64,000 bases of DNA from Pecten maximus. Lineage: Eukaryota. Below, in pieces: positions 8,187 to 44,850 of this stretch. The position numbers were made by a program, and so were the translations under genes. The DNA is taken from assembly GCF_902652985.1 (NCBI RefSeq), contig NC_047022.1:29140001-29204000 (forward strand). Reading direction: 5' to 3'. A model generated the notes under the pieces. It had not been told where the DNA came from, ran no database searches, and worked only from the letters and a program-made list of their open reading frames with translations. Every line of letters begins with the position of its first letter. The first letter of the stretch is position 1.

Positions 8187-8688
8187 CAGGATCTGAACAG
8201 AACTCCGGACTCCAGTAGGCTGCTATAGCTTACTTAACCTTGACTGTTGATTGACCCAATTTTCTATTTGATTATTAGTAGTAAAAAGTGCTTATCTATA
8301 ATAGTGGCTTTAGTCCTATTCCTGTAGTGTGCTTTTTGCATAGCAAGCCTGCAGTTAAAGATCAGATTTACTGTACATTTATAGCGTCTGTCGTCCGGCG
8401 TCCGTCAGCATTTCCTTTAAATCCCTAGCTACTTGTCCTGAACGCCTGAATGGATTTTGATGAAATTTGGTCTGGAGCGTTATTGGGCAAAGGGGATCAA
8501 ACATTGTATAAATGGAGGGTGTGCCTCACCTGGGGCAGGTGGGACGGGGCCCAATAGGGGAAATTGAGTTAGGTCCTTTAAATCCCTACTAGTCCTGATC
8601 GCTTGAATGGATTTTGATGAAATTTAGTCTGGAGCATTATTGGGCAAAGGGGATCAAACGTTGTATAAATGGAGGATGTGGCTCCCTA

Positions 8689-25473: not shown

Positions 25474-28400
25474 ATGAGGATGCATGTAAGCAAATATTTT
25501 ATTGATATTCTAAAACATAATTGATCAAACTGGAATATACACTTACATATGGATTTGAATGTTAAGTATAGACCTGTGCAACATAAAACATTAAAAACGG
25601 AAATATTCTATCAATTAATTATCTGGCCACGGGGGATTTAATTTTACAATATTCACGATTATTATAAACATAGAGTGAAAAGTAAATAGTGAAACTTATA
25701 TTGATATGTACACAGAAATACATTTAAGTTTATATTGCTGAATTTTAACAAGGCTATGCCGTGCGAAATAGTTCGACAGAAACCACCGCGAAATGAAATC
25801 CTCATAAAATTTAGCATGTATACAGGGAGTGAAATGCACTTTAAAATGCATCCCTTATGTACTTGTCACCTATAAAACACCTTTTCAATATGACTTAAAT
25901 CAATACCAAACCGATATTATCCTCACTTGAACACTTTCTCTCTTAGAGAAACTACTTGCTGTTGTATTTCTATTTAAGTCAATTATTGATAGTCAACATA
26001 TTCTGCTATACAGTCGAAAGTATATAGTTTCCCCTTATAACATTAAATGTATTTTTATGATATTATGGACAGGTCTTTGCGTGTTATTTCCTCTCCGTGT
26101 TCATCTCGACATGTCGATGTGGTTACAGTAAGTACGCATCTGCTTAAAGGTTATAAAATTAACTTCTACAATATAACAAACATAACTGGGATCTATATAT
26201 TGTATTTTTTATATATTTAACACAATGTATATATAATGATTACATCATCCAGTGACATCTCATTGTGTGTTTGTATTGTTTTCATTAAGAACTTTGGCAC
26301 CAAAGACTATATAAGCCCCATATTATGTCTATATTCCATCACATTTGACTAGTTAAATTACGAGATGCCATCTATATACACAAATACCTACCAAATTGCT
26401 ATTTTACTCATTTTGCGTGACATTTATGATTGTTCATAGAATCACACAAGATATCTTGTGTATAGGACAGCACCAATGGGGAGGATTAAATATGAATCTA
26501 CATTACGTAATAAAGATTAAATATGAATCTACATTACGTAATAAAGATTAATAAGCGGAGTTTTGTTACAGGGGATGCATTGGTAGTTTCTATTCCTACT
26601 TTTTATGACGACAGTTTAAACGCTAGCACGACGATTGACACCTTGGAAAGTATCCGTAACGTTTTGTCTTCCGACCTCCAACATGCGGATGAAAACCTTG
26701 AGGAATCTTTGGTCAGGTTCTTCTACAATATGTTTTTATGGTGAAGTATAACTCAACATAAGAAGTTACAGCATACAAAAAACAACGCTTAAATTTCATG
26801 TCAACAACACCAAACGGCTCACTCTAAGAAATAACAATTTACAAAATGTATGTTAAAGTTTAATGCTGCCTTTGACCATGCATGCATTTGAAAATAATGA
26901 AATTCTTCTTTTGCAATTCCATAAAATGCTTTGTTTTGTTCGACATATATTTTTAGATATTGCTATTTTAAAATCATCAAATATTAATCTGGTCAATACA
27001 ACCTTCATTTATTTATGAAACTGTTATTTATAATTGTTTGTGTTTAGTTCGAGACTGGCAGTATGATCGATAACATTATCATCAAGTACGGCCAGACCCA
27101 GCTCGACAATGCTAGCATGTTGGATATAGCGGTAGGTAAGTAAAACACGTGTTTGGAAGGATAACAGAACATGCGGAAATACGTGCTCCCTGTTACATAC
27201 TAGTATTCAACGCTGGAGAAGACTTAATTCTGATAAGAACAAAGAAAAGAGGTAAAATATGTTAGACAAGAAAATAGAAACTTTTGACGAGAATTGCAAA
27301 TTTTAACGGTTGTTGTACATATATGTATAATTATATTCTACAAAAAAAGTTGTTTACTTATTGTAAAACATTCGAATGAAAAAATGTTTTGAGGATGAAA
27401 GTCATCCTGTGTTGGGGACATTTTACTGTTCGGTGAGTTGAGCTCAAGGTCCCAATTATGCATACATTGCTTTGCTGAGAGATATGATTGTTTTAATTAA
27501 TCACGACAATTGGCCGGAATATAGTGGATATATATTGTACTAACCTATTCCACTCACTTAGTCTTTGATTTAAGGAAAATGATAGTTCTAAAATAATATA
27601 TAAGTAATAATATACTATGCAAATTGGTTTATAAATGAACCTTTGTTCGTTGATATTCTAACACATATCCAAGCTTTAAGTAATGCTAGAGATTGTTACA
27701 TGATTCTGTAATTCCTTACTATCGTGATAGGTCGAAAAACCGTTTTCAATGTGAACACGTGCTTTTCTTTAAAAATTAATTTGAGACAGAACTGGTAAAG
27801 TTGGTAGAAGTCATGCTTGATGTCATCAGCTTCCTAACGTGCACAGCCAACAACCCTACCGACTGTTCCATCGACAGCTCTAAGGTAAAAACAATTACAC
27901 CACCGACAACCCTACTGGTCGTTCCATTGACAGCTCTAAGGTAAAACAATTACACCACCAACAACCCAACTGGTCGTTCCATCGACATCTCTAAAGTAAA
28001 AACAATTACACCGCCAACAACACTTTTAATTGTTCCATTGACAACACTTTGGTAAGAACACTTACATTTCTAGCGTGTCAAATATTTACAGCTGGGAAAA
28101 TACAATTCAATTCAACTGAATTAAATTTTATTAGCACCTTTAAGTAATCAAAAATGTAAATACATGTATCAATACTATGCGTATTAAATACTAAATCGAA
28201 CTGAATGCAGTCCTTTCTTTCTCAGCTGTAATGACCACTTAATGAATAAACAGTGTATAAAAGTACTATCTTCGTATTTGACGACAACATGATATTTGTA
28301 AGATTTGTTGAATCACTTAGAGTTTAGGTTAATGATATCCGCATTTTCAAGATAGACACGTATCCATCCCATCGGGACAGTAGATACTTGGACAGAAAGT

Positions 28401-31400
28401 CTTTAAGAGCTGTCATTTAAAATGTCTAGTCTTGATAAAGTGCCAATAAAGTCATTTATCATGGCCATCATGTAGGGCAAGAACTGAAAGCCGACAAATA
28501 ACAAATTTCAGTGTTGTTATTTGGAATGTTTGCACCCTGGGAGCTTTGACGTATAAAACGAAAATATGATGTTGTGTTATAGTGTCAAAACAAAAAAGGC
28601 AAAAAACTGACCACAGCATATATAATATACATGTCATATACGAGCATGATAAAACAAATATGTTAACATGTTTGGAAGCCAGTCTTTGTTGTCGAATGTA
28701 TGAGATAAACATCCTATATATACTATATCTACTGAAGTTGAAGAAAAGGTTTCATCTAGAATTACGAAATAAGAATTGAAAAAATGTCAATCAGAAAAAA
28801 TGAATATTCTACTTATTCCGTTTTCGTTTACAATAATCCAAATGCTTTTCTTACCAAAAATCAAAACGATTTCTTATACATGCATTCCACACACTGGAAG
28901 ATGTTTTGTTTTTGTAGTCAATGGGGTATGTGAACACCACCGAGGAGCGACTTCTACAGTTCATGACGATCGTAATTAACAGTCAGTACTCACAGAATGA
29001 GATAGAGATTAGCGAAGGCAATATTGTGATAGCAACAATCAAGAGTAAAGGGGATGTATTGGACAAGATGGTAACTAAATATAGTAGCACGCTGGACATC
29101 CCTTACGTCAGACCGGACGCTGTCCAGTACAACGACCAGGAACTATTACTTTATGTACGTGTTATTGACGAATGTAATATAGGGTTTGTATCAGGTGTTA
29201 GGTGTGTACGTCTAGATTACATAGTGATGATTCATTAAATCTGTATGTGGCTGCGTTTCGAAAGTTGATGAAATGAACTCTTTAATAGTATGCATCGCAA
29301 TTATGTGAAATTATGTTTAAAGTATGTATTTTTTTTATGGTATAACGTTTACGTCCATCCGTCTGTCCGCCCTGTTAAAGTTCGAGTAAAAGCTTCTACA
29401 ATAATCTACAAATCATGTGTTATTATACTAATATTTGGAGATTTTAATTTTTCGGGAACCATGAATTTAATTTCTGGTAATTATTTCTATCCTTTTTTAA
29501 TATTTCTTATCCGTTTTGGATTTTGATTGCCAAGACCATGAATACTTTATATATATATATATATATAAATCTTTGGAGAGGGTCAGAAGGGCGTATTATG
29601 TATCCATTTCCGGTGTTCTCGTTTTTAATGGATAAGAATGTGGTATACTGCTTGTAGAGTCTAAATCCACACCCTTATAAGATACTGCTTTTTGTAAAAT
29701 AAGGATTCGTCATGATACATTTAGAACGCGTGTTGTTATAAGATAAGGTCATTACTTGCTGTATTTACTTATTAATTGACATCATTACAAAGGTATTTCA
29801 CATGAAGACATAATTAACAGAATAAATGTTTGGAATAAAGACTCATTATGTCCTTACTGATACATGTAAATTATTTGTACATTGTTATAGGTTCTTTCCT
29901 ACAACATCAATAAGTATACATACGTAGACAACCAACGCATGATCAACACGGGAACAACTCGTACGGTAATACGGGACAAAGATGGCGATTTCATTGACCT
30001 TTACAGTGGGGATGATCGACTTGAGGTACTGGATTGTATCCCTTTAAATTGTAAAATACTGTTTCAGTTTAACAGACACTTACCTTAAAATGCCAATTCA
30101 ATTAAGATATGTTGTTTATGTTTACGATTTGTTCTTAAATATCATATTAAGATGAAAACTAGCATAGTCTGTATTTTAATCGATAGGTATCGAAATGGAT
30201 TTGGTATAAACACATCCAGTACACAAACGAAGCATTAGCATATGCAAAATATACTGATATATTTTTCCATTTTCTAAAGTAATAGCGTAGATTTTGTACT
30301 TGTGCAATATCAGTTCATTATATTCAATATGTAAACGGTGTAAATGTATAGTACACAATAAGCAAAATAGCATATCACTTTGTAACCATACATAGTTTCA
30401 TGAAGTGTTCGTTATGACCAAAGTGCTGATGGCGTCTGGGCATCATATTGTTTTTTTTTTTTTTTTTTTTTGTGGATTCATGGGATAGAGTTTAAGTTAT
30501 TTGATCACCGTATCAGCAAACTATATCAATTCATCGTTACATGAAGAGTTTGGTAATGGAATTCACAAATCACTGTTTTCTTATGTTGTACCGGTAGATG
30601 GTGGTCGATGCAAACAACGTAATGAACGATCCGAGCTTTTGGGAGAACATAACTAACGTGAACAATAACAACGAATTCTTTCTGAATGCCTCCTTTCAAA
30701 ACAATGTGGACGGGGCGTTGATGAATGTTCGCATTAAGAGCATCATGCCGTGCGTGATGAAAGGATACGATGCAGATCTGAATGCCAGCATCGACAGCCA
30801 GACACCAGTGGTAGACCTACTGATTGACGGGGGCAGGGACCTCACCATCTTCGATAAACCTGCAAATTTGAAGATTGAGTATCGAGGGCAAGATCTATCG
30901 ATTACCTTCCTTCCACCTGACAGTAATCTGGATTCTATGATCTCACTCGACATGTATTTTCAATGCGAAGGTAATCCTTGTAATATTGTCAATTTTAAAT
31001 GCTACATTCATGCATGAGAGTGTTCGTCTTCAGATTTTTTAAAGCGATATAAGGGTGACTGAAACTGTGCCAATGGGTGTGTATGTGCATGGAGGTGGTA
31101 TCAAAAGTTATTTCACTTTGAAAATATTAACATAAGTAAATTATTCACTCTGTGTATCGAAATATCCCCTAAATTGTTATAGCAAATGCCACATTGGGAA
31201 GACATATAAGGGCTAACATATCAACTGACATCAAAGTTATATGCAATATCAATATGGAGCGTTAATAAGCTATATCATTAAAATATGGTATAATTTGTTC
31301 CAGTTTGTCTCGAGAGGGCGCAGATGTCGTTCATCATTGTGAAATCTGAACTCACCGAACAGGACGACTTCGACATAGCAATTAATTTTGTCAAAAAGAT

Positions 31401-34400
31401 GATCAGTGTTGTGAATAATACCCAGTTTTCTCTTCATACATTTGAAACGGTATTCCAAACAGTGTTTTCGTTTGGAGATGGCGTAACATCAGAGTCTCAA
31501 GTAAACAGTTATATTGGAGTGATTTCCACACCTTCCTCGAGTATATCAATTACCACAAGTATCTTGGGGACCACAACTACCGAAAGTGCGACAACCTCCA
31601 CAATCGACCCAAATGCAACGCTGGTCTTGGACCCTGTACGTATCGACACCGCACTGTACAATATGACGTCATACTTATCAACAAACGCTGACTGGTCAAA
31701 ACAGCAGATAGTTCTAGTGATAACAGACGGTCAGTTTGGTCTGAATGATAGTATGATTTACCCTGCACTTAACGGACTTCGCAGCATGAACGTCACCATA
31801 ATGGCTGCGGGTTACGGGTTAAAATCAAGAGATGATATCAAATCATTGGTTAACTTACCTACCAATTGGTACATATTCTGGCTCACCAGGGATCCGACAG
31901 CTGATATTGAAACAAGTGATTTAGAAGAGTTTATGAGCTCCTTCTGTTACGGTAAATATCCTAAATTGACATGTGCTTTTTGTTTAAACTTCATTTGATT
32001 TACATACCAAGTTCAATGGCATATCACTGTTTAACTTAGATCGCTTCCTGCTCTTGTATGTTAAATATAAAACGCATAGCTATACACTGGTAAATGTTTT
32101 TTTTCTTGAATTTGTCTGTACTAAAATATGTTTAAAGCTTTGCAAATACAACACATAGTATAACGACATGTACACGCATACAGTTATTTCAAATTCCATT
32201 AATGACATTGTAATTGCTGACAAATTAAATTTGCTTAAATAGCATTTCAAGACAAACAAATCGAATAGTAAGTTAAGAAACTAAAAGACAATTTGAGACA
32301 TTGTCAATACTATGATACAATTACAGACATTTCACGCATAATATTACTCGCTCTTCCCTTATTGCGTTGCTTAAAGTTTGCTTATATTGATACAAATGTA
32401 TATGTATCATACCCCGATGGAAACAGATGTAAGTAACTATATAAGATAAGGTAATGATATTTCTTCTGATTCGATATTTTGCAGGTTCTTATGGAAATCT
32501 GGCTTTTAATGCAGTACGATTTGGCCGTGTGTCAGCTCTTATGCTCAACGAGACGACCAATCGGTGGCATATCTCGGAAAACATCAAGGTGACTATTTAC
32601 CGCTATTCCTCTGGGGAGTGACATGATCACTGTAACATTCATGTCTGAATTAAATACGTAATATCGTTTACCCCCCCCCCTCCCCTCAAAAAATATATCA
32701 ATAGATAAATAAATAAATAAATAAATAATAATTAAAAAAAGAAAATCACTTGCTCTTACTCATTAAAATTCTTGATATTTGTAATTTATCCTAATTCCGT
32801 CTTCTGCCATTCTAACACTACTCTATCATGCTTAAACTACACCAAATATCACACATTATTCTAGCTACTTTTTCGTACATGTCTATAGTTATTTCTAGCC
32901 ATGAGCAATTATCTATTTTGTTTCTATCCGACTATCAGGTTGTTTTTTTCTCTTAATGGTATGACAAATCAAAATCTTGAAATCATATTGTATATAACGA
33001 AGAACTATGCCAACACTTAATTAAAACGCTTTGAAATATAGAGTTTTCCTTCGTAAAAGTTATTGGAATAGCTCTTACATTTATGAACAAAACAGTTTAT
33101 ATATGTCGCTATTATCTATTTTTTCTGTTTCAGATGAGTGATATATCCATGGCTTCCTCCACAGTGACGTTTAAAAGTAACTTTCTTGGCACGTTTGGTT
33201 CGAATGTGTTTGTAATCCCACCGGATGTGATAAACTTTGATACGCTTTTCGTTGACTTTGCCAGTAAGCTAGAGGACACGCCGTATGTTCTGGCAGTTAA
33301 TGTGGGATGCCTCAGTCTGATGGTTGTATTAATGATTTTCCTTAGATATTTCGACAGCAAGGATTTGTTAAAGGTCAGTATGGTTAGAATTCTGGATAGG
33401 TTCTGGTTTTGTAGCGTATATGTCAGCTGCTCATTTTGCATTTAAAACATTATTACTTTAAAAGAGTAATTCATTTTCGTCTGATCATTAACCCCAAAAT
33501 TATCCAGTGGTGTTTCTCATTTGCCTCTTTTGCTGAGCAGAAGACTGTACTGAATGGGTACAAATCTGAGTGTCGTTCAACAGAAGTTTATCTAAATAAG
33601 CGTCTTCGGCTGATACTAATGTATTACACACGCTTTTATTGCATTTTTGCCAGTGAAATATAGAGATTTATGAAACTAATAAAACTCATATTTTCACTGC
33701 AGCGATGAGCAGTGAAAATAAAAGAATTTGCAGCGAAAATATAAGTTTTGCAGTGAAAATATAAGTTTTCCGTTTTTGACCAGTCAGAGCGGACCTTTGT
33801 AGTCACCTCGTTGAAACTTGCCGATTTTGCCAATCGAAGCGGAGATAAATTGGTTATTTTGCTGTATTTTTGAAATATTCTGACCAGGTTTTGACTAAAT
33901 ACTCACTTGACGTTGGCTATTCATGCACAGATTCTCCTAAAACAGCAGAAAACGCTTAAATTGCGATGATCAGTCCTTTCAAAATGGTGCCGCCGTCAAG
34001 TTGACGTGGAGTAACGTCACACAGAGATGACGTCATTACTGATTCCCGCACTTTTTGATGCTATCGATTTTTCGATGTTTTTAATTTTTACTTTTAAGTT
34101 TATGAAATGCAATAAAAAGAAAATTGAATGGTTTCCCGTTTAATATAACATATATTTCACGAGTATGACAGAATATCGATATTTTCACGAGTGCGAAGCA
34201 TGACAAGAATATCGATATTCTGTCATACTCGTGAAATATATCTTATATTAAACGGGAAGCCATTCAATATCCTCTATATAAAACGAATTTTAAAGTTATT
34301 TCATTGTTATCCATATTTGAGTAGTAAATCTCACTGCGAATGTGCTTTTTTTAGAGACGGAATGAACGGAAAAAACAGATTTTGAATTTGGATGGACTTG

Positions 34401-37400
34401 CGTGTTGCACCCAACAAGTCTTTATACAAACCACTACACCCCATAAGTCGACCTTGGTCGTATGTCTGCCCATAACAACAAATCTGCTACGACCGCTATA
34501 TAAGTGTATTATATTTATACATATAAATTATACATTACACAAGATATTGATTTCGAATTAAACACAAGATTACGGATAAAATTGAAATGGGAGATTCTTT
34601 GGTTTATTCATAGGGTGCTACAATAAGCGGTTAGCGGTAAATTACACAACAGCTTATTTATTTGTCTCAACGCCTGTAAAAGCAACACTAATGATATTTT
34701 GCAATAACACTTGCGAAGAACATCTATCCTTTTACAATGTTTCGAGATATTAAAGCTGGTGAAGGCCACAGGAATTTTCTAAATATGACATCATGATCTC
34801 TTTTGAAAATAATCGATTTCCTTATGCGAAATGATGTCAGATGTGTTTGATGCTTGTTGGTATGCCAAGTACATCGTAGTCACCAATCTCATTTGCGACT
34901 GTGATTTAATCCGACATCGGCCTATATTCCTATGTTGTTTTTAATAATAGGTGTTGTCGTCGAAGCATGAAACGCTTACTCCGCTGGAGCACATTGTCTT
35001 TTTCTCCTCTTTCAGGAATTTCCACGAAAATGAGTATTTTTCTTTATATTTTGACCTCGTTTAATCGATTTTGGTTTCGGTATTATGTCAGTATTCCTCG
35101 TCTTTTTTTTTACAGTGGGAATACCTTCCTTTAAAGAACAATCCGCGCCAGGCTCGTTACTCGTACTATTTGTCTTTTTACACGGGGTTTTGGTCCAGTA
35201 GTCGCCTTTCGTCTACGGCATTTATCATACTCAAAGGCTCCAAAGGGATAACAGGGGCCAGAGCAGTCAAGGACGGGAAACGCAAGGTTAACACTAATAG
35301 TTATCTACTGAGCCGAATTGTTCAAAAGGTGACTAGCACAATCGCTTGATTAGTGAAAAAAAATCATTTTCCTTACTTCAAAACCTTTGTGTGCATCTTC
35401 CTTAAAAAACAGTGATTGACAAGTGTTATTTTTGTCAAGTTAGCATTACTAGAAACGATTTTATCAGGATTTCAAAAGCGTTGCTAAACCTTGATTAACC
35501 TTATCACCTTTTGAACAACCGGCCCTGAATTTTAGTGCTTCAGTACTTTTTATGTCTATGTGCCATTATGACAAACGTAATGTTGCCTATTCCACAAAGT
35601 TTTTATCTATATATAGATGTTTGAACGCTGGACGCTTGGCAACTTTTTGTTGACCACCGACCGAGAGCTAGGGCAACTATCGGAGATTAAAGTATGGCAT
35701 GATGAACAAGGGGACTCTCCCAGCTGGTACCTAGAAAAGGTGCTCGTCTATGATCAATTCAACGATGAAAAGTATGTTATTTCTATGTCAACTACTGTTT
35801 ACTACTTACTCTGAATCAAGCAAATACTCTTTTGCTAATTCTGTGGTATATGATATATTTGACACTAATTTCATTCTCAATTTATTCTCAAAGTTTACAT
35901 ATACATTGTATTGCGAATTAGTTATATTCTGACATTATATAGAGGTACGCGTGGAGTTTCAACTGATCTTGTTGTCCTAGGTACGCGTTCCTGTGTGGAC
36001 AATGGCTAGCCCCGGATAGGGACGACCGTAAAACAAGAAGAACGCTCTATGCTGCTAAGGCAGAACTGAAGGACGGCAGTATTTTGTTTGGAAGTAACAC
36101 AAGATTCAACCTGTTCGACGACTATCTTTGGCTTTCACTGCTTAGCAGGCCTTCAGCTAGCCGTTTTACAAGAGTTCAACGCTGTGTATGTGTGTTTTCC
36201 ATGCTGTTTTTATCCATGCTAGCGAATGCGATGTGGTACAGAACATCACAAGGAGTTCAGACTTATGGGATTCACCTTGGACCGTTCAGTCTCACCTACA
36301 AGAATATTTACGTTGGTTGTATGGCAAGTTTGGTGACATTTATTCCAGGATTTCTTATTGCGTGGATATTTAGGAACCGCAAAGTAAAAGTCGGCAAATC
36401 CTTTATGGAACAGAATACGAAGGAAGTGATGAATGAAGGTTTCTTACCTTGGTGGTTTATCTTCATTGGATATACCATAGCAATGATGTGTATGTCTTCT
36501 GGTGCAACCTTCACCTTTTTCTATAGTATTGAATGGGGTCGAGATACCACGCTCGAATGGCTAGGGTCTTTCACTTTCGGAACAATGCAGGGAATCATGT
36601 TCTTAGATCCACTCAAGGTTTGTAATATCTCATCAAAAGCAGCCTTAATAATGTTAGTATGTGTTATAACTTAACTAGTCATACTTTACACAGGCAGAAG
36701 TGCTGTCAACATTTCAAATCATCGCTAATCCAAAATCACCGTCGACAAATTTTAAGAAATTTTAAGTACGGATTGTTATGAATCATACATCAAATTAAGA
36801 ATAAGAAACTCATTTAATGTTAATCCAGAGGCAATTGAATAATGAGTAAAATCAGAAATTTGACAGAATAATGACTACATTTGAAGTTTTAAATTCCAGC
36901 CTTCAGGGCGGGGAAAGATGATTTTGTCTATAACAAAAAAAAAAGAGCATTGTGTGTGCTGAACATCACCTTGTATACATATGCACATATACATGCACAA
37001 ACATGTCAAACATCAGGCAAATGAGCCAATCAATATGACACGGTTTGATGATCTTGCGAGGTTGCTACATTTGGTTAAATGACCAAATATCTTATCCTCT
37101 CTGATTAGATATGTTAAGGTCTAAATAAGCTAGTTCATAATCAATTAATCTTCATTGTACTAATCATATTATCTAGAGGATAACAACTATTTTACCCCAA
37201 TATATTGTACATGTATATAGCGGTGACCTTTGTAGGTGGTATTTCTTACCTTGATGGTAGCATTTTTCTGCAAGAAATATGCCAAGAAAGATCTGGAATG
37301 TATGGCGCCGGTACTTGTGGAGAACGATGCATCTGAAGACAGAATTGAACAAGATGACGATTTCGTTGACGTTGACGGTATCTTTCTTATCTGTATCAGG

Positions 37401-40400
37401 CTTTCAACTTCCAATGCATTGTGCTTTGTGCCTTCTGGCTATTACCATCTTTAAAATTACTTTCCACGGATTTTAGATGTTTAAATGCAAAATATGTAGG
37501 TGGTGTATTGCAACCGATCAAACACTATTGTTTTAATTTGAACTAAAATTTCTAAAATAATCCAAAAGCTTAGAGTTACTAACTCACGTATATATACCCG
37601 TATTTACATCCGTCCTGGATAACAAAAATCCTCTTACCCTTTATCAGTGGTATACAAAATGATATCAGTTATCTACACTATTGATTTGCAATTTATTTCA
37701 TAGAAAGACCTCGATTGTAAATCAAAATATTAAATTGTTCACAGAAAATATCTTTGAAGACAAGTCAAACACAACGAATTACGACAAGAGGGAGAGGGCG
37801 CGGTTGTACAAGTTAGTACAGTTAGATAGAAAACTGTTGTTGTCCGCTCGCGCCCTTCTCATTCAGGCTGCATACATAACTATTCTAGCGGTAATATGTG
37901 CCCACAACTCTGTTTGGACATCTTATCTTCAGAACAAGTCTTTGGAGAAACGTCTGACTCCGACTTATCGGGTAAGTGTGCTGGTGAATTGCATGCTAAC
38001 CTGAACTGTACTTCCTACGTCATGGTGTGCGCAATTGATTGGTATTACTTTGTAGTTTTTTGTCATTCCTGCTTCGTAAGTAAATACATTGTATTCACTT
38101 AGACGAATACCAGTATTACTTGTTAAATGTCAAACAGGGTAATAAATAAAAGTGTTCATTAGATAATTTTTTAGTTTGATTAACTTTGTTATATAATAGT
38201 TTTTGTTGAAAAATCCCAATGAAACAATTACTATATTACAAATGTCAATAAAACAAATGAAAACAATTGTAATATCAAATAGGAAAACAGTTATATATTT
38301 TGCTGAAGGTTTTTTTACGCGGTTCAATATAAAGTTTACAATACTAACTATAATAATATGTCAAGGCTGTTAAATTGCGTTTGTATCACAGATCAATTCG
38401 ACAGACGACATATGGGCGTGGCTTCGTGGACGATTTGCTGACGCATTGTATCCAAAACTGTTTTACAATGGTGATGTAAGGCTGAATGAATCCCGATATT
38501 ACATGTCCGATGACGTCAGTTACCGCATGGGTTTGGCTAGGATTCGACAAATGCGTGTTAAAGGTTGGTGTCCTCATCATCAACAAAAACTGCAATGCTC
38601 CGAAATGTTTGAATTTATGATCACCACATGTATCAACTCATCATTTTCTTAATGATTTACTGAATAGAGGTGTGGGGAAATTTCGCCGATATGGCGATTA
38701 GGTGTCTAAATCATTTTCTGTGTAACATAAATAATTTTATGAACATCTATGAATATACAAAACTTTGATGTTAATATACTTATAACAAACAGTTTTACCA
38801 TTTGATAGTAAAATATTTTCTGAAATTAACTTAAAATCAGTAAAAACAGATTTCAAAACACCGTTTTTCCTAATTATCTGATTTAGTCCATAAAATGTTG
38901 CTAGGCCCCCTCATACACCTCATGATATTGTGACGTCAAAATGTGTTTCGCCATATAGATAAGGAGCCGTCTCTTTAGTAGGAATTCAAAGAATTGCATC
39001 CTCAGTTTTATATCGCACTAATAGATCTATCTAGCGTCATTTTCAAAGTAATTATTTAGATGAAGATGAACGACAATCGGAGTAATAAATAAGTATTTTA
39101 TAGGAATTAGACCAGGTGGATTTTAAAGACCCCTTTGGCCATTTTAATCGTGTGAATAGTTTCACCGGGAATATACATATATTTCATGTTTAAAAAAAAG
39201 TATGACCTGATATCCACGGAGATATGGAACTAGTTTAATTGTGAGGTTTATGCGTCATTTTCAATACTTTAACATTATGTTTTGCACTTTGTATTTTTCT
39301 GACTTTTCTGCTGGATTTCCACACTTTGTTCTCAAGCATCACCAACAAAATCTGTATATATTAATGTGTTTTAATTATAATTCGGCATTCATTAAATCCA
39401 TGTTTGTATACATTGGTATTCATTGGTGATCTTCTATACAATTCTTTAGTTTGTTTGTTTGTGTTGATATATACAAGGTGTAATGTTTATTGAAATATGA
39501 TACATGTAGTTATGTGATATTTCGATATGTTATATATCTTTTTAATAGTTCTCCTTTTTAATAAATCGCTGAAACTGATGATTTCTTTTACAAATATTTA
39601 TTTTAATGTTCTTTGCACAATTTGTATAAAACATATCAGGTTATATAACGTTAAAACGACCATAGTATTGTACATTTACAGGGAAGTGCGACATTCCGTC
39701 ACTGCTACAGGGTCTCATATATACATGTCCTCCAGAGTATTCGGCTGCGAGCATGGAAAAGACTCACTTTTGTGAAGGTAACTATAACAAAATACTCTGT
39801 ATTAAAGTACATGAAGGGTAGGATAAGGTCATCGTCGGTAGCCTACGTTCCACTGTACTGTCGATTATCGAAGAGACACGTAATGATACTACTGCGGGCT
39901 ACCGAGGATGAGATAAGGTCTCGTATATCAGTTATTCGTCCCATAATGGTGGTGGTTCAGTCAAAATGTCGTAAGAATTATCAAATATTATTTCATAACT
40001 TTAAAAGTTTTGAAACATTCTGGTTAAAATACAACACTATAGCATATTATGCATTACGCGTTACATTCAAGGTTGTAAAAGGGTTTCTACAATATAGGCA
40101 TTATATGATTAAAAACTAATATTAATTACATGTGGTATATTGTTATAACACATAATGATTGATTGTTCTGGATAGAATCACTAGAAACTGCAACACTAGA
40201 AATCAATACGCTGTGCATTCATTATTGTCGGTAAACTAGTCCATATACACAACTTTCAGTATTGGTATTTGCGATATCAATATTTGGATTGCACACAAAG
40301 TAACACGTTTTAATGCTCTCTCTACACCAATGGATTTTTGTTTAGAAGGTAATTTACATGAACAAATTGACCTAACAAACAACTACCTATGAGTAATGTA

Positions 40401-43400
40401 TCTTGCCGGTTAGTTTGGCCTGTAAGGTCGTGGGGTTCAATGATGTCAGTGTAAATATTGTATCATTACGTTGCAGTCTTTTGTTTTAATTCATCTGTAT
40501 GTAGGGAGTGGCGTCTTCTCTAATATGAGTGAAGTGATATTCAACCGAGTCTAAACTATGTTGGGTTGTAATATTATTAGTCCCCTGCCGACGTACAAGC
40601 TCCTTTATATTTTTGACAACCTACTTATTTTCACAAGAGAATATATCTGCTGGTGCAATGTTTATAAAGGGAAGATAAAAGAAATACACATTTACCGATC
40701 AAATACAGGGACTTGTATTAAATAGGTATTGGGCAGCACAACCGAGTGGCTAATGACACAATAATGTACATGTGCAAGTACCTGTCATTGTAGGTAGGAC
40801 TTGAACTCTGTAATACTCTTATCACTTGAATTGCCATTAATGAAGTTATATGCTTAATTTAATATAAACAATATAACACATTATTCTAAGACAATGGTGG
40901 AAATCAGTGTAAATACCTCCAGCTGCTTGATACTAAATAATTAAATGTTCATGGGCAGGCGTGGGCAAAACAATTAACGATTCGTCGGTTAAGATGTATT
41001 TTGACTACGTTGGTACTAATACTTCCTTAATTATACCAGAACCAGGGATAACGAAAAATTCCAGTGCTCCTCTGCAAGTTACTTTCAATTATTTACCATT
41101 AACTAAATTTTAATCTTATGTAACTATCCATTCAGGTTGGACGGACTATAATCCAAAGAAATGCAACGGCAGTGAATGGACGTTTAAAGGTGAGGATGAG
41201 ATCGATTCCATGTCCATATTCGGTGACCATGATATCTATGGCGGAGGAGGATATGTGAAGTTACTCGACCAATCAGTGAAGGAGATAAGAAACGATTTGT
41301 ACGCCATGCAAGCCTACGGTTGGATAGACCGTTTTACTCGACTTGTTGTTATAGAATTCGTTGTATACAACCCAGATTCCAAACTGTTTTCATTACCAAC
41401 GTTAATCATAGAAATGCCTCAAACTGGCGGATATTATCCGACAGTTAGAATAAAGACGGCACGGTTGTACCCATATATAGACTCGTTTGACTACCTTGTT
41501 CTCGGATTACAACTTCTCTTCCTGGTTGTCACGTTTTGTCGCTTCTTACATTTGATTTATACGACATGGCAGATTGGTCGGCGCTGTTTCTCGCAAATCA
41601 GTCAGTGGGTGTACCTCATCAGCATCATGACGTCAGTAGCAGCCATTGTGTTCTACATTGTACGCATAGACAGGACAATCTATACTATAGAAGAATTATT
41701 TAATTCAAGCGGTGAGTAAAGATAAATGTATCATTTACAACATGTCATCGTTCTGTCGATATCTATGAATCAGATCACTTTTCATACATATAGGATCTTA
41801 ATGACTTTTTATTTCATAACGATTTTTGTAAGTAGTCTTCGATTAAAAAAATGCGTTCCTTAGAAAGCAAACGGTAAAATATGATATTAAATGAAAGTAA
41901 CGGTAATATATTTTTAATGCATTATTGAGAAAACTTACATTTTGACAGTTATAAAGTCAAAATGCTGAAAACAAAATCAAGCCTAAGTAGCCATTTTGTT
42001 GTGCCATTTTTAATATATGGCCTAACGCCATTTTCTATATCATATTTACATTTACACTGCAGCCCCACTAATAACTTTACCATAACTTCCAAATCTTTAT
42101 TATGACGTCATTATTATAGTGCCGTCATAATTGTAACGTCGGCGATAACGAAAGATGGCTGTTGAAAAGGCTGTTCCGGCTTTGACGATAATAATTTGTT
42201 CATTCATCGTAGAACCAAAATTCCTGGATATAGACTTTAAAAATCGTTGTCAAATGTAAATATAAGCATTAAACTGCTTTCATTTGGAAGTTATGGGCTG
42301 ATGAATGCCAACTGGACAAAGGCAAATTCAACATGAAACGCTAGCGCGCTTCATTGAATTTGCCTTTGTCCAGTTGGCATTCATCAGCCCATAACTTCCA
42401 AATGAAAGCAGTTCAATGCTTTAATAACATCACTTCACAAATTGACTAGCACAGCCAATGGAAAACGCTCCAGACATTTGCAAAATATTACAAATACCTG
42501 GAAAATAGGCCGATTATGTGGTACAATAGGATACGGCAGATGTCGTAGAAGCTGAGTTACACTCTTAAACCCTGTATGCTATACATTAATACCCGACGTG
42601 GGAAATCTTAAATCAGAGTTTAATATGAAACTTCCGAAGTTCAATATCATCGCCACTAAAAGTCGTTGGTTTAAAATACCGTTGAATTTCAAGTATATTC
42701 AATGTCTCTAAAGTTTAATAATTCATAAATGCAAATGTTTAGATTAGCTTGCCTGTTGCTGTTGTGGAAAATTGATTTCCACATACATAAATTACCTATA
42801 CCGCATCCAAGGTGATAACAAAAGTTGATTCTAGGAATCAGACCAGGTGATTTTTACAGACCCCACATGGATATTTTGTCCGAATCCAATGAACATTAAA
42901 TCAAAGCGATATTTGATATTTTCGCCAAGTCGTATACAAGACCATGTCGTTTCGAATATACGCAACTCTTATGAAATGCATCAACTCATTTTGCAGGCGA
43001 GTTCGTGACCTTTGATATAGTGGATGCCATGGACACTGCATATAAGGTGTGTGTCAGTGCGGAGTTGTTTGTGGCAGTGCTGGACTTATTGCGGCCTCTT
43101 ACATTCAATCACAACATCTATTTAATGAGGACATCTGTTTCTGTGTGCGCCAAAGATCTCCTGTCCTTTGGATTGTGTATTATGGTCCCGATGGTTGGTT
43201 TTGCAATTCTCTGCTTCGTTTGTGTAGGACCGTATCAAATGGAATTTAGGAACTTTGTAGCCGCCTTTATTACATTGTTTCGGACGTTATTAGCAATGGT
43301 CAAAATTAAGGACACTTTTGGGGAGCGTGACATCGGTATCAGCTTTGTCTTTTCAGTTTTTCTATTTGTTATGACCATACTTATGGTGAACTTTTGTATC

Positions 43401-44850
43401 GGTATCTTAAACAACGCGTTCAGTCATGTAAAAAACAACAAACCGATGCATGCTGATGTCGAAGTATACGACATGGATCTCCACAAACACTTCTGGCGCA
43501 AGATAAATGATATCCTAAAAATATTTGAACGAAAACCGAGAAAAAACAATTATAAGGAGGAAGGTGAGTAAAAGGGTGATGTTTAATGTTCTCCGAATTT
43601 CTCGGAAAATGTTATTGGTGTTATCTAGTTTTGATGACAAGGAAATCATGTTGGAAATCGATGATTGCTATTTCATGATATCTTGGATCATTAAATTTTA
43701 ATCATTAATTATATATACAGGTTTTATGTCAACGTTTGAAGACAAATAAAGTGTTACATTCCATCAGTTTCAAAAACACCGAAAGAGATAACATCCGAAA
43801 ACGTTAGATTTCATCCTGGTGATGTAAACAGAAAACATATATTACAAAGAAGTTCTTTTATAAAAATTAAATTATTGTCTTTATTTTTTAGACTTCGCTG
43901 GAGTACTTGGTTTGTCAATGACTCTAGACAATCAGGTTAGTACGTATAGCTTTGTAGTCAATCTATCTCTTCATATTGTATTAATATAACATTGAAATAA
44001 TAACTCTGTGTATATAAATGTATTAAGAAAAGTAAGAGCACTCGGTGATTTTGTAAAATTATTGTAAAATCATTCCTGTTGTTGAAGATTAAGTTTCTTA
44101 ACGAAGAGTTAATAAAACATATTTCTACCGTTCTAAACAGATCTTCAAACTTGTGAGTCATTTGGAGCGTGCCTACCACAACGAAAACAACTTTAAAACG
44201 AAATACAATGCTGTGAGTATTTTACATATATTGGAATGTGTGTTATTATCATGATATTGATGCGATTAATTTTGAAATGATCTGAAACTAAACTGATTTT
44301 CTTCACATTTTGAAATTGATCAATAATTTAAGAAAAGATGATTCTGTGTATCTGGCTTGACATTCTGTATAAAACCCTATCATAACATTAAAAGCGTTAT
44401 TACTCTTTATTTGCTTTAAATACAAACAGAAATCAGTCCCGTGTCAGCATACAACCACACACTCAAAATTGATTTCGATAACAGGATTATTGATACTTCA
44501 AAACAGAAGAAATGACAAATCTTGCGGTTAGATAATGGGTCTAAAATTGAATATTTGATATTTTGACTTTGGCTTATCCGAAACGGGCGTTTTGTTAACG
44601 TTGGTATATTAATTAATTTAGAATATATAACCTTCCTGGAAAAAAAATAGTCTTTTTCTAAATATTGCAGATGGTGAAGAACTTACCCAAAAAATACCAT
44701 AGGAAAACAGGTCCTTTTGGATACGAGAACACATTCTACCAGTCGCCATTCGACGACATCCAAGAGGAAGGTTACGTCGATGGACAGTCAGAAGATTATA
44801 ATTCCGGGGAAGCCTTTGAAACTTCGTTTGATTATATCGTGGATAGTTAG
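25474..44850 (+). CDS. Polycystin-1 family (PKD1-like/PKD1L2-like) 11-TM receptor-channel subunit, about 1721 aa, 23 coding exons
   Basis: Hand-spliced GT-AG exons, all phase-compatible: 25474-25485, 26073-26127, 26572-26711, 27048-27135, 27790-27884, 28918-29154, 29891-30025, 30598-30970, 31304-31951, 32485-32588, 33134-33373, 35116-35286, 35617-35771, 35981-36617, 37236-37377, 37745-37971, 38392-38563, 39682-39777, 41136-41711, 42997-43563, 43892-43935, 44141-44212, 44671-44850 (5166 nt). Signal peptide MRMHVFACYFLSVFISTCRC, PLAT domain, SRFTRVQR motif, TOP motifs RIRQMRV and YGGGGY, channel helices. The first two and last three exons are less certain. Confidence 0.88.
27846..28060 (+). repeat. 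~56-bp minisatellite, about 4 copies, spanning an exon end and 5' splice site
   Basis: Unit CCAACAACCCTACCGACTGTTCCATCGACAGCTCTAAG|GTAAAAACAATTACACCA. Confidence 0.9.
31304..31951 (+). CDS. VWA-domain exon of the PKD1-like gene (symmetric phase 1-1, 648 nt)
   Basis: C...QMSFIIVKSE...DFDIAINFVKKMI...TQFSLHTF...TALYNM...QIVLVITDG...LNGLRSMNVTIMAAGYG...C follows the VWA pattern. Confidence 0.8.
33134..33373 (+). CDS. PKD1-like exon: end of GPS, stalk and TM1
   Basis: NFLGTFGSNVFVIPPDVINFDTLF...TPYVLAVNVGCLSLMVVLMIFLRYFDSKD. Confidence 0.9.
33659..34279. mobile_element. Non-autonomous hairpin-ended element (Crypton-like) in a PKD1-like intron
   Basis: Termini ATATAGAG...CTCTATAT. ~60-bp-arm hairpin at 34123-34268 with GCGAAGC in the loop. 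Shorter hairpin TATTTTCACTGC...GCAGTGAAAATA near the left end. Confidence 0.6.
35116..35771 (+). CDS. PKD1-like PLAT-domain exons (35116-35286, 35617-35771)
   Basis: YYLSFYTG...IILKGSKG...LGQLSEIKVWHDEQGDSPSWYLEKVLVYD. Confidence 0.92.
35311..35524. mobile_element. Harbinger-type MITE with CTG TSD in the PLAT intron
   Basis: CTG|AGCCGAATTGTTCAAAAGGTGA ... TCACCTTTTGAACAACCGGCC|CTG. TIR is related to that of the 6809-8186 element. Confidence 0.75.
35981..36617 (+). CDS. PKD1-like exon: PLAT end and TM2-TM5
   Basis: FLCGQWLA...DDYLWLSLLSRPSASRFTRVQR...NAMWY...LPWWF...FYSIEWG...DPLK. Confidence 0.95.
41136..41711 (+). CDS. PKD1-like exon: TOP (polycystin) domain and S2-S3
   Basis: YGGGGYVKLL...GWIDRFTRLVVIEFVVYNPDSKLFS. 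Confidence 0.95.
42264..42421. repeat. Near-perfect inverted repeat with ~67-bp arms, probably the end of a hairpin-type transposon
   Basis: AAGCATTAAACTGCTTTCATTTGGAAGTTATGGGCTGATGAATGCCAACTGGACAAAGGCAAATTCAA and its reverse complement. Extra CATAACTTCCAAAT copy at ~42081. Confidence 0.9.
42997..43563 (+). CDS. PKD1-like exon: S4-S6 channel region
   Basis: LLRPLTFNHNI...KDLLSF...FRNFVAAFITLFRTLL...TILMVNFCIGILNNAF. Confidence 0.95.

What the first reader, a model, noticed from the sequence alone, without database searches (positions are those of the whole stretch)
25474..33373. Minimal polycystin-1 receptor with a VWA domain spliced into its GAIN region
Seen: the signal peptide is followed by only about 360 aa of helical then beta-rich sequence, then a 216-codon VWA-like exon (31304-31951, phase 1-1), then the GPS and TM1. 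No REJ, PKD/Ig, lectin or LRR modules are recognisable, and there is no room for them. Known: PKD1-family proteins normally carry adhesive modules N-terminal to an uninterrupted GAIN domain, and symmetric phase 1-1 exons are the classic unit of extracellular exon shuffling. Inference: a VWA module was shuffled into a GAIN loop about 35 aa before the GPS tryptophan and could be skipped in frame. That would give a PKD1-type sensor with a swappable ligand module, an architecture I do not recognise.
Basis: partly seen in the sequence, partly recalled or inferred. Interest (0 to 1): 0.8.

Follow-up and report, generated by a model that had tools for sequence, protein, structure and literature searches.

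The report
VWA domain nested in scallop polycystin GAIN
A king-scallop polycystin-1-like receptor gene really does carry an expressed, conserved exon that places a von Willebrand A domain inside its membrane-proximal GAIN-like domain, an arrangement that databases annotate automatically and that I found described in no paper.

Summary
The window is Pecten maximus chromosome DNA. The gene is the RefSeq "polycystic kidney disease protein 1-like 2" model P0016, 100% identical over its exons.

- **Splicing:** spliced RNA contigs from two samples confirm the junctions 30970>31304 and 31951>32485 exactly. No skipped form was seen.
- **The exon:** it is 648 nt, phase 1-1. It matches Pfam VWA and folds as a Rossmann VWA whose closest solved structures are integrin I-domains.
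- **Insertion:** alignment with VWA-less molluscan relatives shows a clean insertion. One relative has a 48-nt phase 1-1 mini-exon with an RRRR motif in the same slot.
- **Flanks:** they are collinear with the region between REJ and TM1 of canonical PKD1L2 proteins, taken to be the GAIN domain (hhalign 98.9%; pre-insertion part alone 95.2%). They are predicted to co-fold (ipSAE 0.65, best control 0.00).
- **Age:** VWA-bearing genes form one clade spanning scallops and Mytilus. P. maximus has three such genes in tandem.
- **Degeneracy:** this copy has lost the MIDAS motif. The whole molluscan clade has lost the GPS cysteines and the HL/T cleavage triad.

A full GAIN 3D model could not be made, and function is inferred only. 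I rate it a new variant of a known kind, of moderate-to-high interest.

The parts
25474..25485 (+). Putative exon 1 (ATG, codes MRMH; phase-0 GT donor)
   Evidence: Sequence only. It fits the two-short-exon 5' structure of the Argopecten ortholog. It is not covered by RNA or by homology.
26073..26127 (+). Exon 2: hydrophobic core of the signal peptide, ending in phase 1
   Evidence: The translation ..FLSVFISTCRCGY matches exon 2 of Argopecten P0018 (..FLSVLISTCRCGY). It has AG/GT sites and joins exon 3 in frame.
26572..26711 (+). Exon 3: start of the mature ectodomain (N-terminal part of the GAIN-like domain)
   Evidence: tblastn with P0018 residues 29-73, 62% identity. Frame continuity checked.
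27048..27131 (+). Exon 4
   Evidence: tblastn with P0018 residues 74-101, 79% identity. Splice sites read.
27786..27884 (+). Exon 5. The RefSeq model P0016 starts inside it, at 27813.
   Evidence: tblastn with P0018 residues 102-134 (82%) and P0016 residues 1-24 (100%). Junction 27884>28918 is phase 0.
28918..29154 (+). Exon 6
   Evidence: P0016 at 100% identity. RNA contigs cover it and show the joint 29154>29891.
29891..30025 (+). Exon 7. It codes the strands predicted to pair with the GPS-like last strand.
   Evidence: RNA joints 29154>29891 and 30025>30598. The ESMFold2 interface residues 220-263 of P0018 map here and to the end of exon 6.
30598..30970 (+). Exon 8: an all-beta module directly before the VWA. 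It ends ..QCE plus one base (phase 1).
31304..31951 (+). Exon 9: the complete VWA domain, 216 codons, phase 1-1. It has a Cys near each end, a degenerate MIDAS motif and a Ser/Thr-rich disordered loop (about 31520-31635).
   Evidence: Pfam VWA at E 2.2e-8. AF2 pLDDT 76.5, pTM 0.77. Foldseek finds integrin alpha-M, alpha-X and alpha-2 I-domains, mussel PTMP1 and vWF A3, E from 3e-9. RNA joints on both sides. dN/dS about 0.19 against Argopecten.
32485..32588 (+). Exon 10: first half of the GPS-like region, with the conserved Trp (..NRWHISENIK)
   Evidence: RNA joints 31951>32485 and 32588>33134. This Trp is nearly invariant in 29 PKD1-like proteins (W636 of P0018). hhalign of the post-insertion part gives 98.1%.
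33134..33373 (+). Exon 11: second half of the GPS-like region, with the stalk strand (..FKSNFLGTFGSNVFVIPP..) and TM1
   Evidence: RNA contigs. Alignment to the canonical C-x-C-x-HLT-x-FG motif shows HLT replaced by FLG and the cysteines lost. The best PDB hit, polycystin-1 chain 6a70_B, starts matching here.
35116..35286 (+). Exon 12: loop after TM1 and start of PLAT
   Evidence: Contig loose ends after 33373 read TGGGAATACC.., which is the sequence at 35116. P0016 tblastn.
35617..44850 (+). Exons 13-23: PLAT, TM2-5, the polycystin (TOP) domain, the PKD-channel-like last six TM segments and the C-terminal tail. The stop codon is at 44848-44850.
   Evidence: Pfam PLAT, Polycystin_dom and PKD_channel. 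P0016 tblastn at 96-100% identity and exact junctions. PDB sequence matches to polycystin-1, polycystin-2 and PKD2L1.
62263..62490 (+). First coding exon (signal peptide plus N-terminus) of the downstream tandem paralog B. Its own VWA exon lies about 4 kb beyond the window end.
   Evidence: The ORF shares the N-terminal motif of exon 3. The paralog's VWA exon is at G000:C8:29208062-29208619, phase 1-1, coding P0015.

Best explanation
The window holds an expressed 23-exon gene of the king scallop for an 11-TM polycystin-1-like (PKD1L2-type) protein.

Its ectodomain is only a GAIN-like juxtamembrane domain: an N-terminal part, then beta strands, then an Ig-like beta-sandwich. One symmetric phase 1-1 exon places a complete VWA domain inside it. 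The VWA enters directly before the strand that starts the GPS region.

The VWA was acquired once, by exon shuffling into a pre-existing phase-1 intron slot, before mussels and scallops diverged. The gene then duplicated into a tandem A-B-C cluster; the window gene is A.

The whole molluscan clade has lost the GPS cysteines and the HL/T autoproteolysis triad. Types A and B have also lost the MIDAS metal site, and type A gained a mucin-like loop on that face. Type C and the Mytilus gene keep an intact MIDAS.

Inferred mechanism: the protein is an uncleaved PKD1-type subunit that probably pairs with a PKD2-like channel. Both ends of the VWA are anchored next to the strands that cage the stalk (tethered-agonist-like) strand. 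The VWA would therefore act as an external handle whose binding or pulling is passed to the membrane core without shedding of an N-terminal fragment.
For: **Shown**
- RNA junctions on both sides of the exon.
- Pfam VWA hit, and the VWA fold by AF2 plus Foldseek.
- Clean insertion relative to the VWA-less relatives P0023-P0028.
- The same phase 1-1 slot in Mytilus, in Argopecten type C and in paralog B. A 48-nt phase 1-1 mini-exon occupies the slot in VWA-less P0023.
- The flanks are collinear with the region between REJ and TM1 of canonical PKD1L2: hhalign 98.85%, E 4e-17, 349 columns. The pre-insertion part alone gives 95.2%, E 2.8e-8. A reversed control gives 0.1%.
- The flanks are predicted to co-fold: ipSAE 0.65 against a best control of 0.00. 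That mark was reached by 51 of 78 solved complexes and 2 of 108 mismatched pairs. The runs agree in at least 56% of contacts and partner pLDDT is at least 50. The GPS-like last strand pairs with residues 220-263.
- The VWA-bearing genes are monophyletic on a tree built from the TM region only, SH-aLRT 98.
- Tandem A-B-C cluster on the same chromosome.
- Purifying selection on the exon, dN/dS about 0.19.
- PKD1-family membership: PLAT, Polycystin_dom and PKD_channel, and best PDB match to polycystin-1 at E 6e-48.

**Background:** modelled PKD1-type GAIN domains carry an extra beta-sandwich and an extended S10 strand, and the GPS Cys and Trp lie in S10 (PMC11697300).

**Inferred:** pairing with a PKD2-like subunit, the handle mechanism, and a disulfide between the two terminal cysteines of the VWA.
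Against: - The GAIN fold is therefore not seen directly.
- The co-folding model has low pLDDT (50-59) and used no alignment.
- Pfam GPS, REJ and GAIN models do not hit, even at E<=10.
- The language-model lead to GAIN and GPS clusters scores only 0.75-0.80, below the tool's 0.9 mark.
- Exon 8 alone matches only generic Ig-like sandwiches.
- The lost MIDAS and the fastest evolution of any exon (59% identity against 72-88% elsewhere) weaken the ligand-binding reading for this copy.
- Tissue, partner and ligand are unknown.
- The tree is a quick search with SH-aLRT support only.
- Exon 1 is unverified.
Confidence: 0.8

Rival explanations
1. Tandem arrangement rather than nesting. The VWA simply lies between two independent units: an N-terminal domain of unknown type, and a short degenerate GPS remnant that serves only as a stalk. 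No domain is interrupted.
For: Pfam finds no GPS, REJ or GAIN on either side. Exon 8 folds on its own as an Ig-like sandwich. Its residues were not among the confident contacts with the post-VWA segment.
Against: VWA-less relatives join the two flanks with only 15-30 residues. The whole flank pair is collinear with the region between REJ and TM1 of canonical PKD1L2. The post-VWA strand is predicted to pair with strands about 400 residues upstream, while the controls score 0.00. In solved GAIN domains a GPS segment is part of the beta-sandwich rather than a free-standing unit (Arac 2012, from my own knowledge).
Confidence: 0.1
2. Decaying passenger. The VWA exon in this A-type gene is a relic that now serves only as a glycosylated spacer, with no specific binding role.
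For: MIDAS DxSxS is replaced by KSELT. A 40-residue Ser/Thr-rich disordered loop sits on the former ligand face. The exon has the lowest identity and the highest dN/dS of the exons compared.
Against: dN/dS of about 0.19 still indicates constraint, although dS is saturated. The reading frame is intact in three genera and two paralogs. The core strands, the terminal cysteines and the TDG motif are conserved. The model has a confident Rossmann core. Some VWA domains, such as vWF A1 and A3, bind ligands without a metal (from my own knowledge).
Confidence: 0.15
3. Regulated cassette. The exon is alternatively skipped, giving VWA-plus and VWA-minus receptors from one gene.
For: Skipping is in frame (phase 1-1) and would give ..QCE-G-SYG.., which resembles VWA-less relatives. 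A transcript of the B-type gene in another scallop uses an aberrant junction at the 3' end of the VWA exon.
Against: All contigs that cross these introns include the exon, in two samples. RefSeq lists a single form. Contigs cannot show rare variants, so this evidence is weak.
Confidence: 0.1

Closest known systems
Vertebrate and invertebrate PKD1L2/PKD1L3-type polycystin-1-like proteins (e.g. mouse PK1L2, P0093; PKD1L3 in PDB 7d7e)
   Same: The layout from the GPS region onward is the same: TM1, PLAT, TM2-5, polycystin/TOP domain and PKD-channel-like last six TM segments. The juxtamembrane ectodomain is homologous by profile comparison.
   Different: There are no lectin, PKD-repeat or REJ modules. 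A VWA domain is nested before the GPS strands. All four GPS cysteines and the HL/T triad are lost.
GAIN domain of adhesion GPCRs and polycystin-1 (Arac 2012; GAIN-GRN, PMC11697300)
   Same: The position directly before TM1 is the same. The GPS-type Trp and the ..FG.. stalk strand are conserved. The last strand is predicted to be buried against earlier strands. An extra beta-sandwich before S10 is described for PKD1-type GAIN models.
   Different: The domain is interrupted by a roughly 215-residue foreign domain. It is not expected to self-cleave. The fold was not verified in 3D here.
Integrin alpha-I ('inserted') domain
   Same: A VWA domain is nested in a loop of a host beta-domain. Integrin I-domains are the best structural matches of the exon's model. 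In types A, B and C it is a single-exon or two-exon module.
   Different: The host is a GAIN-like sandwich rather than a beta-propeller. The MIDAS is lost in this copy, though it is intact in type C and the Mytilus paralogs. No internal-ligand relay is known.
Sea-urchin REJ proteins and C. elegans LOV-1 (invertebrate PKD1 relatives)
   Same: They are invertebrate PKD1-family receptors with lineage-specific ectodomains. RefSeq names one clade member 'receptor for egg jelly-like' and another 'location of vulva defective 1-like'.
   Different: Those proteins carry their modules N-terminal to the REJ/GAIN region (from my own knowledge). This was not compared here.

Membership tests
Polycystin-1-like (PKD1/PKD1L, 11-TM) family | PLAT/LH2 domain in the first intracellular loop after TM1 | tested here: met
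   Pfam PLAT at E 1.1e-10 in P0016, and at 1.2e-6 for exon 35617-35814.
Polycystin-1-like (PKD1/PKD1L, 11-TM) family | Polycystin (TOP) domain plus PKD-channel-like C-terminal six TM segments | tested here: met
   Polycystin_dom at E 1.3e-36 and PKD_channel at E 1.9e-22. PDB matches to polycystin-2 and PKD2L1 at about E 1e-43 to 1e-45.
Polycystin-1-like (PKD1/PKD1L, 11-TM) family | Stalk, TM1 and TM2-5 region homologous to the polycystin-1 C-terminal fragment | tested here: met
   The best PDB hit is polycystin-1 chain 6a70_B at E 6e-48, query residues 543-851.
Polycystin-1-like (PKD1/PKD1L, 11-TM) family | GPS motif with its cysteines and HL|T/S cleavage triad | tested here: not met
   There is no Pfam GPS hit at E<=10. 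Alignment shows FLG in place of HLT, and the cysteines are lost. The Trp and the FG of the motif are kept. This lowers 'cleavable GPS', not family membership, because the region is homologous.
GAIN domain | Juxtamembrane domain homologous and collinear with the region between REJ and TM1 of canonical PKD1-like proteins | tested here: met
   hhalign gives 98.85% over 349 columns, 95.2% for the pre-insertion part alone, and 0.1% for a reversed control. The matched region lies between Pfam REJ and GPS in P0029.
GAIN domain | Helical subdomain A plus beta-sandwich subdomain B, with the GPS strands as its last strands (3D fold) | tested here: inconclusive
   The flanks co-fold in ESMFold2 (ipSAE 0.65 against 0.00), but at pLDDT 50-59. 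The Atlas lead to GAIN-A and GPS clusters scores 0.75-0.80. No full model was possible.
GAIN domain | Autoproteolysis at the GPS | not testable with these tools
   The sequence lacks the His and the Thr/Ser of the triad. Absence of cleavage is predicted, not measured.
VWA domain (PF00092) | Profile match above the curated cut-off, and a Rossmann-type alpha/beta fold | tested here: met
   35 bits against a cut-off of 23.8. AF2 pTM 0.77. Foldseek probability 1.0 to integrin I-domains and vWF A3.
VWA domain (PF00092) | MIDAS metal site (DxSxS ... T ... D) | tested here: not met
   The window gene has KSELT. Orthologs have RSRLT or KSSLV, and type B has LSNKV or LSREV. Type C (DSSGS) and Mytilus (DASGS) keep the motif.

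The most novel reading that the evidence does not exclude
The loop before the first GPS strand of this molluscan PKD1-like clade is an exon-defined, interchangeable slot. After GPS self-cleavage was lost, different paralogs filled the slot in two ways. Some carry a mini-exon with a furin-type site (RRRR|S, RQRR|S), which would restore a two-chain receptor by an outside protease. Others carry a VWA domain, with MIDAS intact in type C and Mytilus, which would couple ligand binding or force directly to the strands that cage the tethered stalk. These would be natural experiments in activating a GAIN-type receptor without autoproteolysis.
Probability: 0.25. Interest if true: 0.75.

Novelty: new variant of a known kind. 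Interest (0 to 1): 0.6.

Why it matters
GAIN domains of adhesion GPCRs and polycystins are generally treated as compact, uninterrupted autoproteolytic units. How ligand binding or force reaches the tethered agonist is an open question.

This family offers a natural case in which the domain is interrupted by a VWA at a defined loop and has lost the residues needed for self-cleavage. The case is old (it predates the mussel-scallop split), expressed and under selection.

Sister genes carry either an intact-MIDAS VWA, a MIDAS-less VWA or a furin-type mini-exon in the same slot. That gives a ready comparative set for testing non-dissociative activation of PKD1-type receptors.

It is also a clean example of phase 1-1 exon shuffling into the interior of a domain. 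The claim is structural and evolutionary. No function is known in scallops.

Tried and rejected
**Steps that could not be run**
- Folding the whole ectodomain. It was translated only inside a script, to check frame continuity.
- A sub-range of a database protein was not accepted by structure prediction, and all full-length relatives with a complete ectodomain exceed 1200 residues. I did not fold P0028 (1171 aa, partial), because it lacks the strands predicted to pair with the stalk.

**Searches that gave little**
- Pfam GPS, REJ and GAIN at a relaxed threshold gave no hit.
- A PDB profile search with the family alignment listed only polycystin, TRP, PLAT and other cation-channel chains among the best 60 shown, and no GAIN entry.
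- Foldseek and VIA on exon 8 gave only generic Ig-like sandwiches.
- The Atlas search gave a weak lead only.
- The exhaustive search with the VWA exon gave 14 hits. Only one (P0002) is polycystin-like, the eight others scanned (P0001, P0003-P0007, P0009, P0010) are multi-VWA proteins and five were not scanned. The window's own VWA is too diverged to trace a donor.
- The Logan transcript L001 covers only the VWA plus the downstream part, so it did not supply an intron-free ectodomain.
- No skipped isoform was seen, but contigs cannot exclude one.
- The search of earlier findings returned nothing for this genome.
- Literature searches found no description of a VWA in a polycystin GAIN domain. 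The first search call failed on a term-length rule.

**Readings rejected**
- The reading that the signal peptide is MILWTGLCV.. (frame of the ATG at 26057). Its donor phase cannot join exon 3, whereas the frame giving ..FLSVFISTCRCGY matches Argopecten.

Full report
**What the locus is**

The window is AT-rich animal DNA. The database protein P0016, RefSeq "polycystic kidney disease protein 1-like 2 [Pecten maximus]" (1615 aa), matches the window's exons at 96-100% identity from 27813 to 44847. Its contig length, 46,176,750, equals that of the window's own contig, G000:C8. So the window is king-scallop chromosome DNA, C8:29,140,001-29,204,000.

Pfam finds PLAT, Polycystin_dom and PKD_channel, plus VWA, and nothing else even at E<=10. 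The best solved relative by sequence is human polycystin-1 (6a70_B, E 6e-48, from the stalk through TM5). Polycystin-2 and PKD2L1 follow for the channel-like part. Membership of the 11-TM PKD1-like family is therefore solid.

**Checking the observation**

The joined spliced model was never sent to a search or fold tool. I searched exon by exon by reference, or used database proteins. The only joined step was a translation inside a script, to check the reading frame.

Four runs of the same species (two samples, one 2015 study) contain contigs with introns removed at GT..AG borders, so they are RNA. They give the following joints:
- 29154>29891
- 30025>30598
- 30970>31304 (X1, X4)
- 31951>32485 (X2, X3, X4)
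- 32588>33134
- continuation from 33373 into 35116

No contig joins 30970 to 32485, but contigs drop rare forms.

The exon is 648 nt with phase-1 introns on both sides. Its translation hits Pfam VWA at 35 bits against a cut-off of 23.8. With an alignment of relatives it folds as a beta-alpha-beta Rossmann domain (pLDDT 76.5, pTM 0.77). Residues 71-112 are disordered and Ser/Thr-rich. The nearest solved folds are integrin alpha-M, alpha-X and alpha-2 I-domains, mussel byssus PTMP1 and vWF A3 (E from 3e-9, probability 1.0).

**The 5' end**

RefSeq starts its model at 27813, inside exon 5. The Argopecten ortholog P0018 (1736 aa) extends further and matches conserved open exons at 26572-26711, 27048-27131 and 27786-27884. 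Its second exon (..FLSVLISTCRCGY) matches the window at 26073-26127 (..FLSVFISTCRCGY). That window exon has an AG acceptor and a phase-1 donor that joins exon 3 in frame.

The upstream neighbour is an unrelated single-exon C2H2 zinc-finger ORF ending at 20022. Large upstream ectodomain exons are excluded.

**Is the VWA an insertion?**

A word search from the conserved part of P0016 found 109 relatives. The closest form a molluscan clade.
- Seven carry the VWA: types A and B in Pecten, Ylistrum and Argopecten; type C in Argopecten; and one in Mytilus.
- Six lack it: Ylistrum, Argopecten, Pinctada and Haliotis.

In a MAFFT alignment the VWA-less proteins align on both sides of the VWA. On the N-terminal side they align up to ..x-C-E. 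On the C-terminal side they align from ..R-x-x-x-V/L.. into the conserved Trp and the ..SNF(F/L)G(T/S)F.. strand. Only 15-30 residues lie between these points in the VWA-less proteins.

Gene structure agrees:
- The VWA is one phase 1-1 exon in the window gene, in its downstream paralog B and in Mytilus.
- It is two exons, with all borders in phase 1, in Argopecten type C.
- The VWA-less Ylistrum gene P0023 has phase-1 introns at the same two positions. Between them lies a 48-nt phase 1-1 mini-exon coding GSLTRRRRSANPAAS.

This is the pattern expected for exon shuffling into an existing phase-1 slot. The genome holds at least 150 VWA-coding open frames of about 200 aa, so single-exon VWA modules are abundant.

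**Is the host a GAIN domain?**

Canonical PKD1L2 proteins have about 400 residues between Pfam REJ and GPS that no Pfam model covers. From my own knowledge and from PMC11697300, this is the GAIN domain.

A profile of the clade's ectodomain, with the VWA treated as an insert, aligns to the 450 residues before TM1 of 16 canonical proteins. The result is 98.85% probability, E 4e-17, over 349 columns. The pre-insertion part alone gives 95.2%, E 2.8e-8, over 257 columns. A reversed control gives 0.1%. The matched canonical residues lie between REJ and GPS. The insertion point falls in a variable-length loop just before the strand that carries the first GPS Cys and Trp. That strand is S10 in the generic GAIN numbering.

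ESMFold2, given the two flanks of the ortholog P0018 as separate chains, packs them with ipSAE 0.65 in three runs. The best of three controls scored 0.00. The mark was reached by 51 of 78 solved complexes and 2 of 108 mismatched pairs. The runs agree in at least 56% of contacts, and partner pLDDT is at least 50. The contacts put the stalk strand (..TFKSNFLGTFGSNVF) against residues 220-263 and the Trp region against residues 225-231. This supports nesting but does not prove it, because pLDDT is only 50-59.

The language-model search places the pre-VWA part nearest to GAIN subdomain A and GPS clusters. The scores, 0.75-0.80, make this a lead only.

Exon 8 alone folds as a nine-strand Ig-like sandwich. 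That is compatible with the extra beta-sandwich reported for modelled PKD1-type GAIN domains.

I could not obtain a single full model. The GAIN fold is therefore well supported by homology but not seen directly.

**State of the functional motifs**

The canonical C-x-C-x-H-L-T-x-F-G reads F-K-S-N-F-L-G-T-F-G in this gene. The His and Thr of the cleavage triad and all GPS cysteines are gone. The Trp and the F-G are kept. The same holds for the whole molluscan clade, so loss of self-cleavage predates the VWA.

The VWA of type C and of Mytilus keeps DxSxS and TDG. Types A and B have lost the Asp and both Ser (KSELT here). Type A has in addition a mucin-like loop between helices 2 and 3, on the former metal-site face. 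A Cys near each end of the VWA is conserved in all seven full-length proteins. A terminal disulfide as in vWF A domains is my inference.

**Evolution**

A tree from the TM region only, excluding the VWA, groups all eight VWA-bearing rows (SH-aLRT 98). Mytilus joins Argopecten type C, and types A and B are sisters. The bivalve VWA-less genes form the neighbouring clade (quick search, no bootstrap). One gain before the mussel-scallop split is the simplest reading.

In P. maximus the three genes lie in tandem on C8. Their VWA exons are at 29,171,306 (A, this window), 29,208,062 (B) and 29,266,230 (C, 85% identical to Argopecten type C). In Argopecten, A and C also lie within 100 kb of each other.

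Against Argopecten, the VWA exon has dN/dS of about 0.19. Neighbouring exons give 0.06-0.13. dS is saturated, so the values are rough, but the exon is constrained.

**Mechanism**

*Shown:* an expressed PKD1-type protein whose juxtamembrane domain carries a nested VWA and lacks the residues for GPS self-cleavage.

*Inferred:* it pairs with a PKD2-like subunit, as polycystin-1 and PKD1L3 do. The VWA, anchored by both ends next to the strands that hold the stalk, serves as a binding or pulling handle that acts without shedding. For this A-type copy the lost MIDAS makes metal-dependent binding unlikely. A spacer or glycan-bearing role is a live rival.

**Novelty**

The domain list VWA+PLAT+PKD_channel is already visible in automatic annotations. 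I found no paper on it. The large modelling survey of GAIN domains does not use the words 'insertion' or 'inserted'. I rate it a new variant of a known kind, interest 0.6.

Noticed in passing
L004:3038-3085 (Ylistrum VWA-less relative P0023); also protein alignment columns of P0024, P0025, P0026 and P0040: The slot that holds the VWA exon holds, in a VWA-less relative, a 48-nt phase 1-1 mini-exon coding a furin-type RRRR|S motif. Other VWA-less relatives have RQRR or KR there. A Nematostella canonical PKD1L2 has SRRRRS and RQKR in the equivalent loop. This may be protease cleavage replacing the lost GPS self-cleavage.
   Followed up: partly
G000:C8:29208062-29208619 and G000:C8:29266230-29266607 (beyond the window end): There are three VWA-bearing PKD1-like genes in tandem on one chromosome: A in the window, B about 4 kb past its end, and C about 62 kb further on. 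C is not among the RefSeq hits from P. maximus and keeps an intact-MIDAS type of VWA (85% identical to Argopecten type C).
   Followed up: partly
window 27813 (RefSeq start) versus 25474-27884: The RefSeq models of this gene in Pecten (P0016) and Ylistrum (P0017) both start at the same internal Met and lack a signal peptide. Conserved upstream exons show that they are truncated at the N-terminus. The models of paralog B (P0015, P0002) are truncated as well.
   Followed up: partly
window 27847-28066: A 56-nt tandem repeat with 3.9 copies duplicates the last codons of exon 5 together with its GT donor. This gives a row of possible alternative donors just inside intron 5.
   Followed up: no
window 26484-26551: A perfect 31-nt tandem duplication (2.2 copies) lies in intron 2, just upstream of the exon 3 acceptor.
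   Followed up: no
L001:480-620 (Logan transcript contig, run SRR19746228, another scallop; B-type gene): The transcript changes frame at the 3' end of the VWA exon. The last few codons, including the terminal Cys-Tyr-Gly, are missing, and the called ORF (P0019) restarts at a downstream Met. This could be an alternative donor, a broken copy or an assembly error.
   Followed up: partly
window 28557-28748 and 27529-27680: Short unspliced RNA contigs lie inside introns 5 and 4 of the gene. They may be repeat-derived or intronic transcripts.
   Followed up: no
window 8688-12477: There are at least three head-to-tail copies of a 1745-bp unit whose aligned 300-nt segments are 100% identical. Identical 73-aa ORFs lie at 9537-9758 and 11282-11503. 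This is either a very young tandem repeat or an assembly artefact.
   Followed up: no
window 53757-57483 (- strand): A retroelement with reverse transcriptase, a tyrosine recombinase (Phage_integrase) and a weak, below-cut-off GDSL-type hydrolase match. I recall this gene set from Ngaro/DIRS-like elements. It lies between the two polycystin paralogs.
   Followed up: partly
window 16174-20022 (+): A single 1282-codon open frame full of C2H2 zinc fingers, with raised GC and AT skew, is the upstream neighbour of the polycystin gene.
   Followed up: partly
window 2780-4003 (+): A fragment of a reverse-transcriptase ORF (Pfam RVT_1), from a non-LTR-type element.
   Followed up: no
G000 genome-wide (e.g. 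C19:32.26-32.45 Mb, C3:51.18-51.20 Mb, C11:24.64-24.70 Mb): At least 150 VWA-coding open frames of about 200 aa lie in dense tandem arrays. The best non-polycystin match to the type C VWA is 48% identical (C3:51.19 Mb). This is a large pool of single-exon VWA modules.
   Followed up: no
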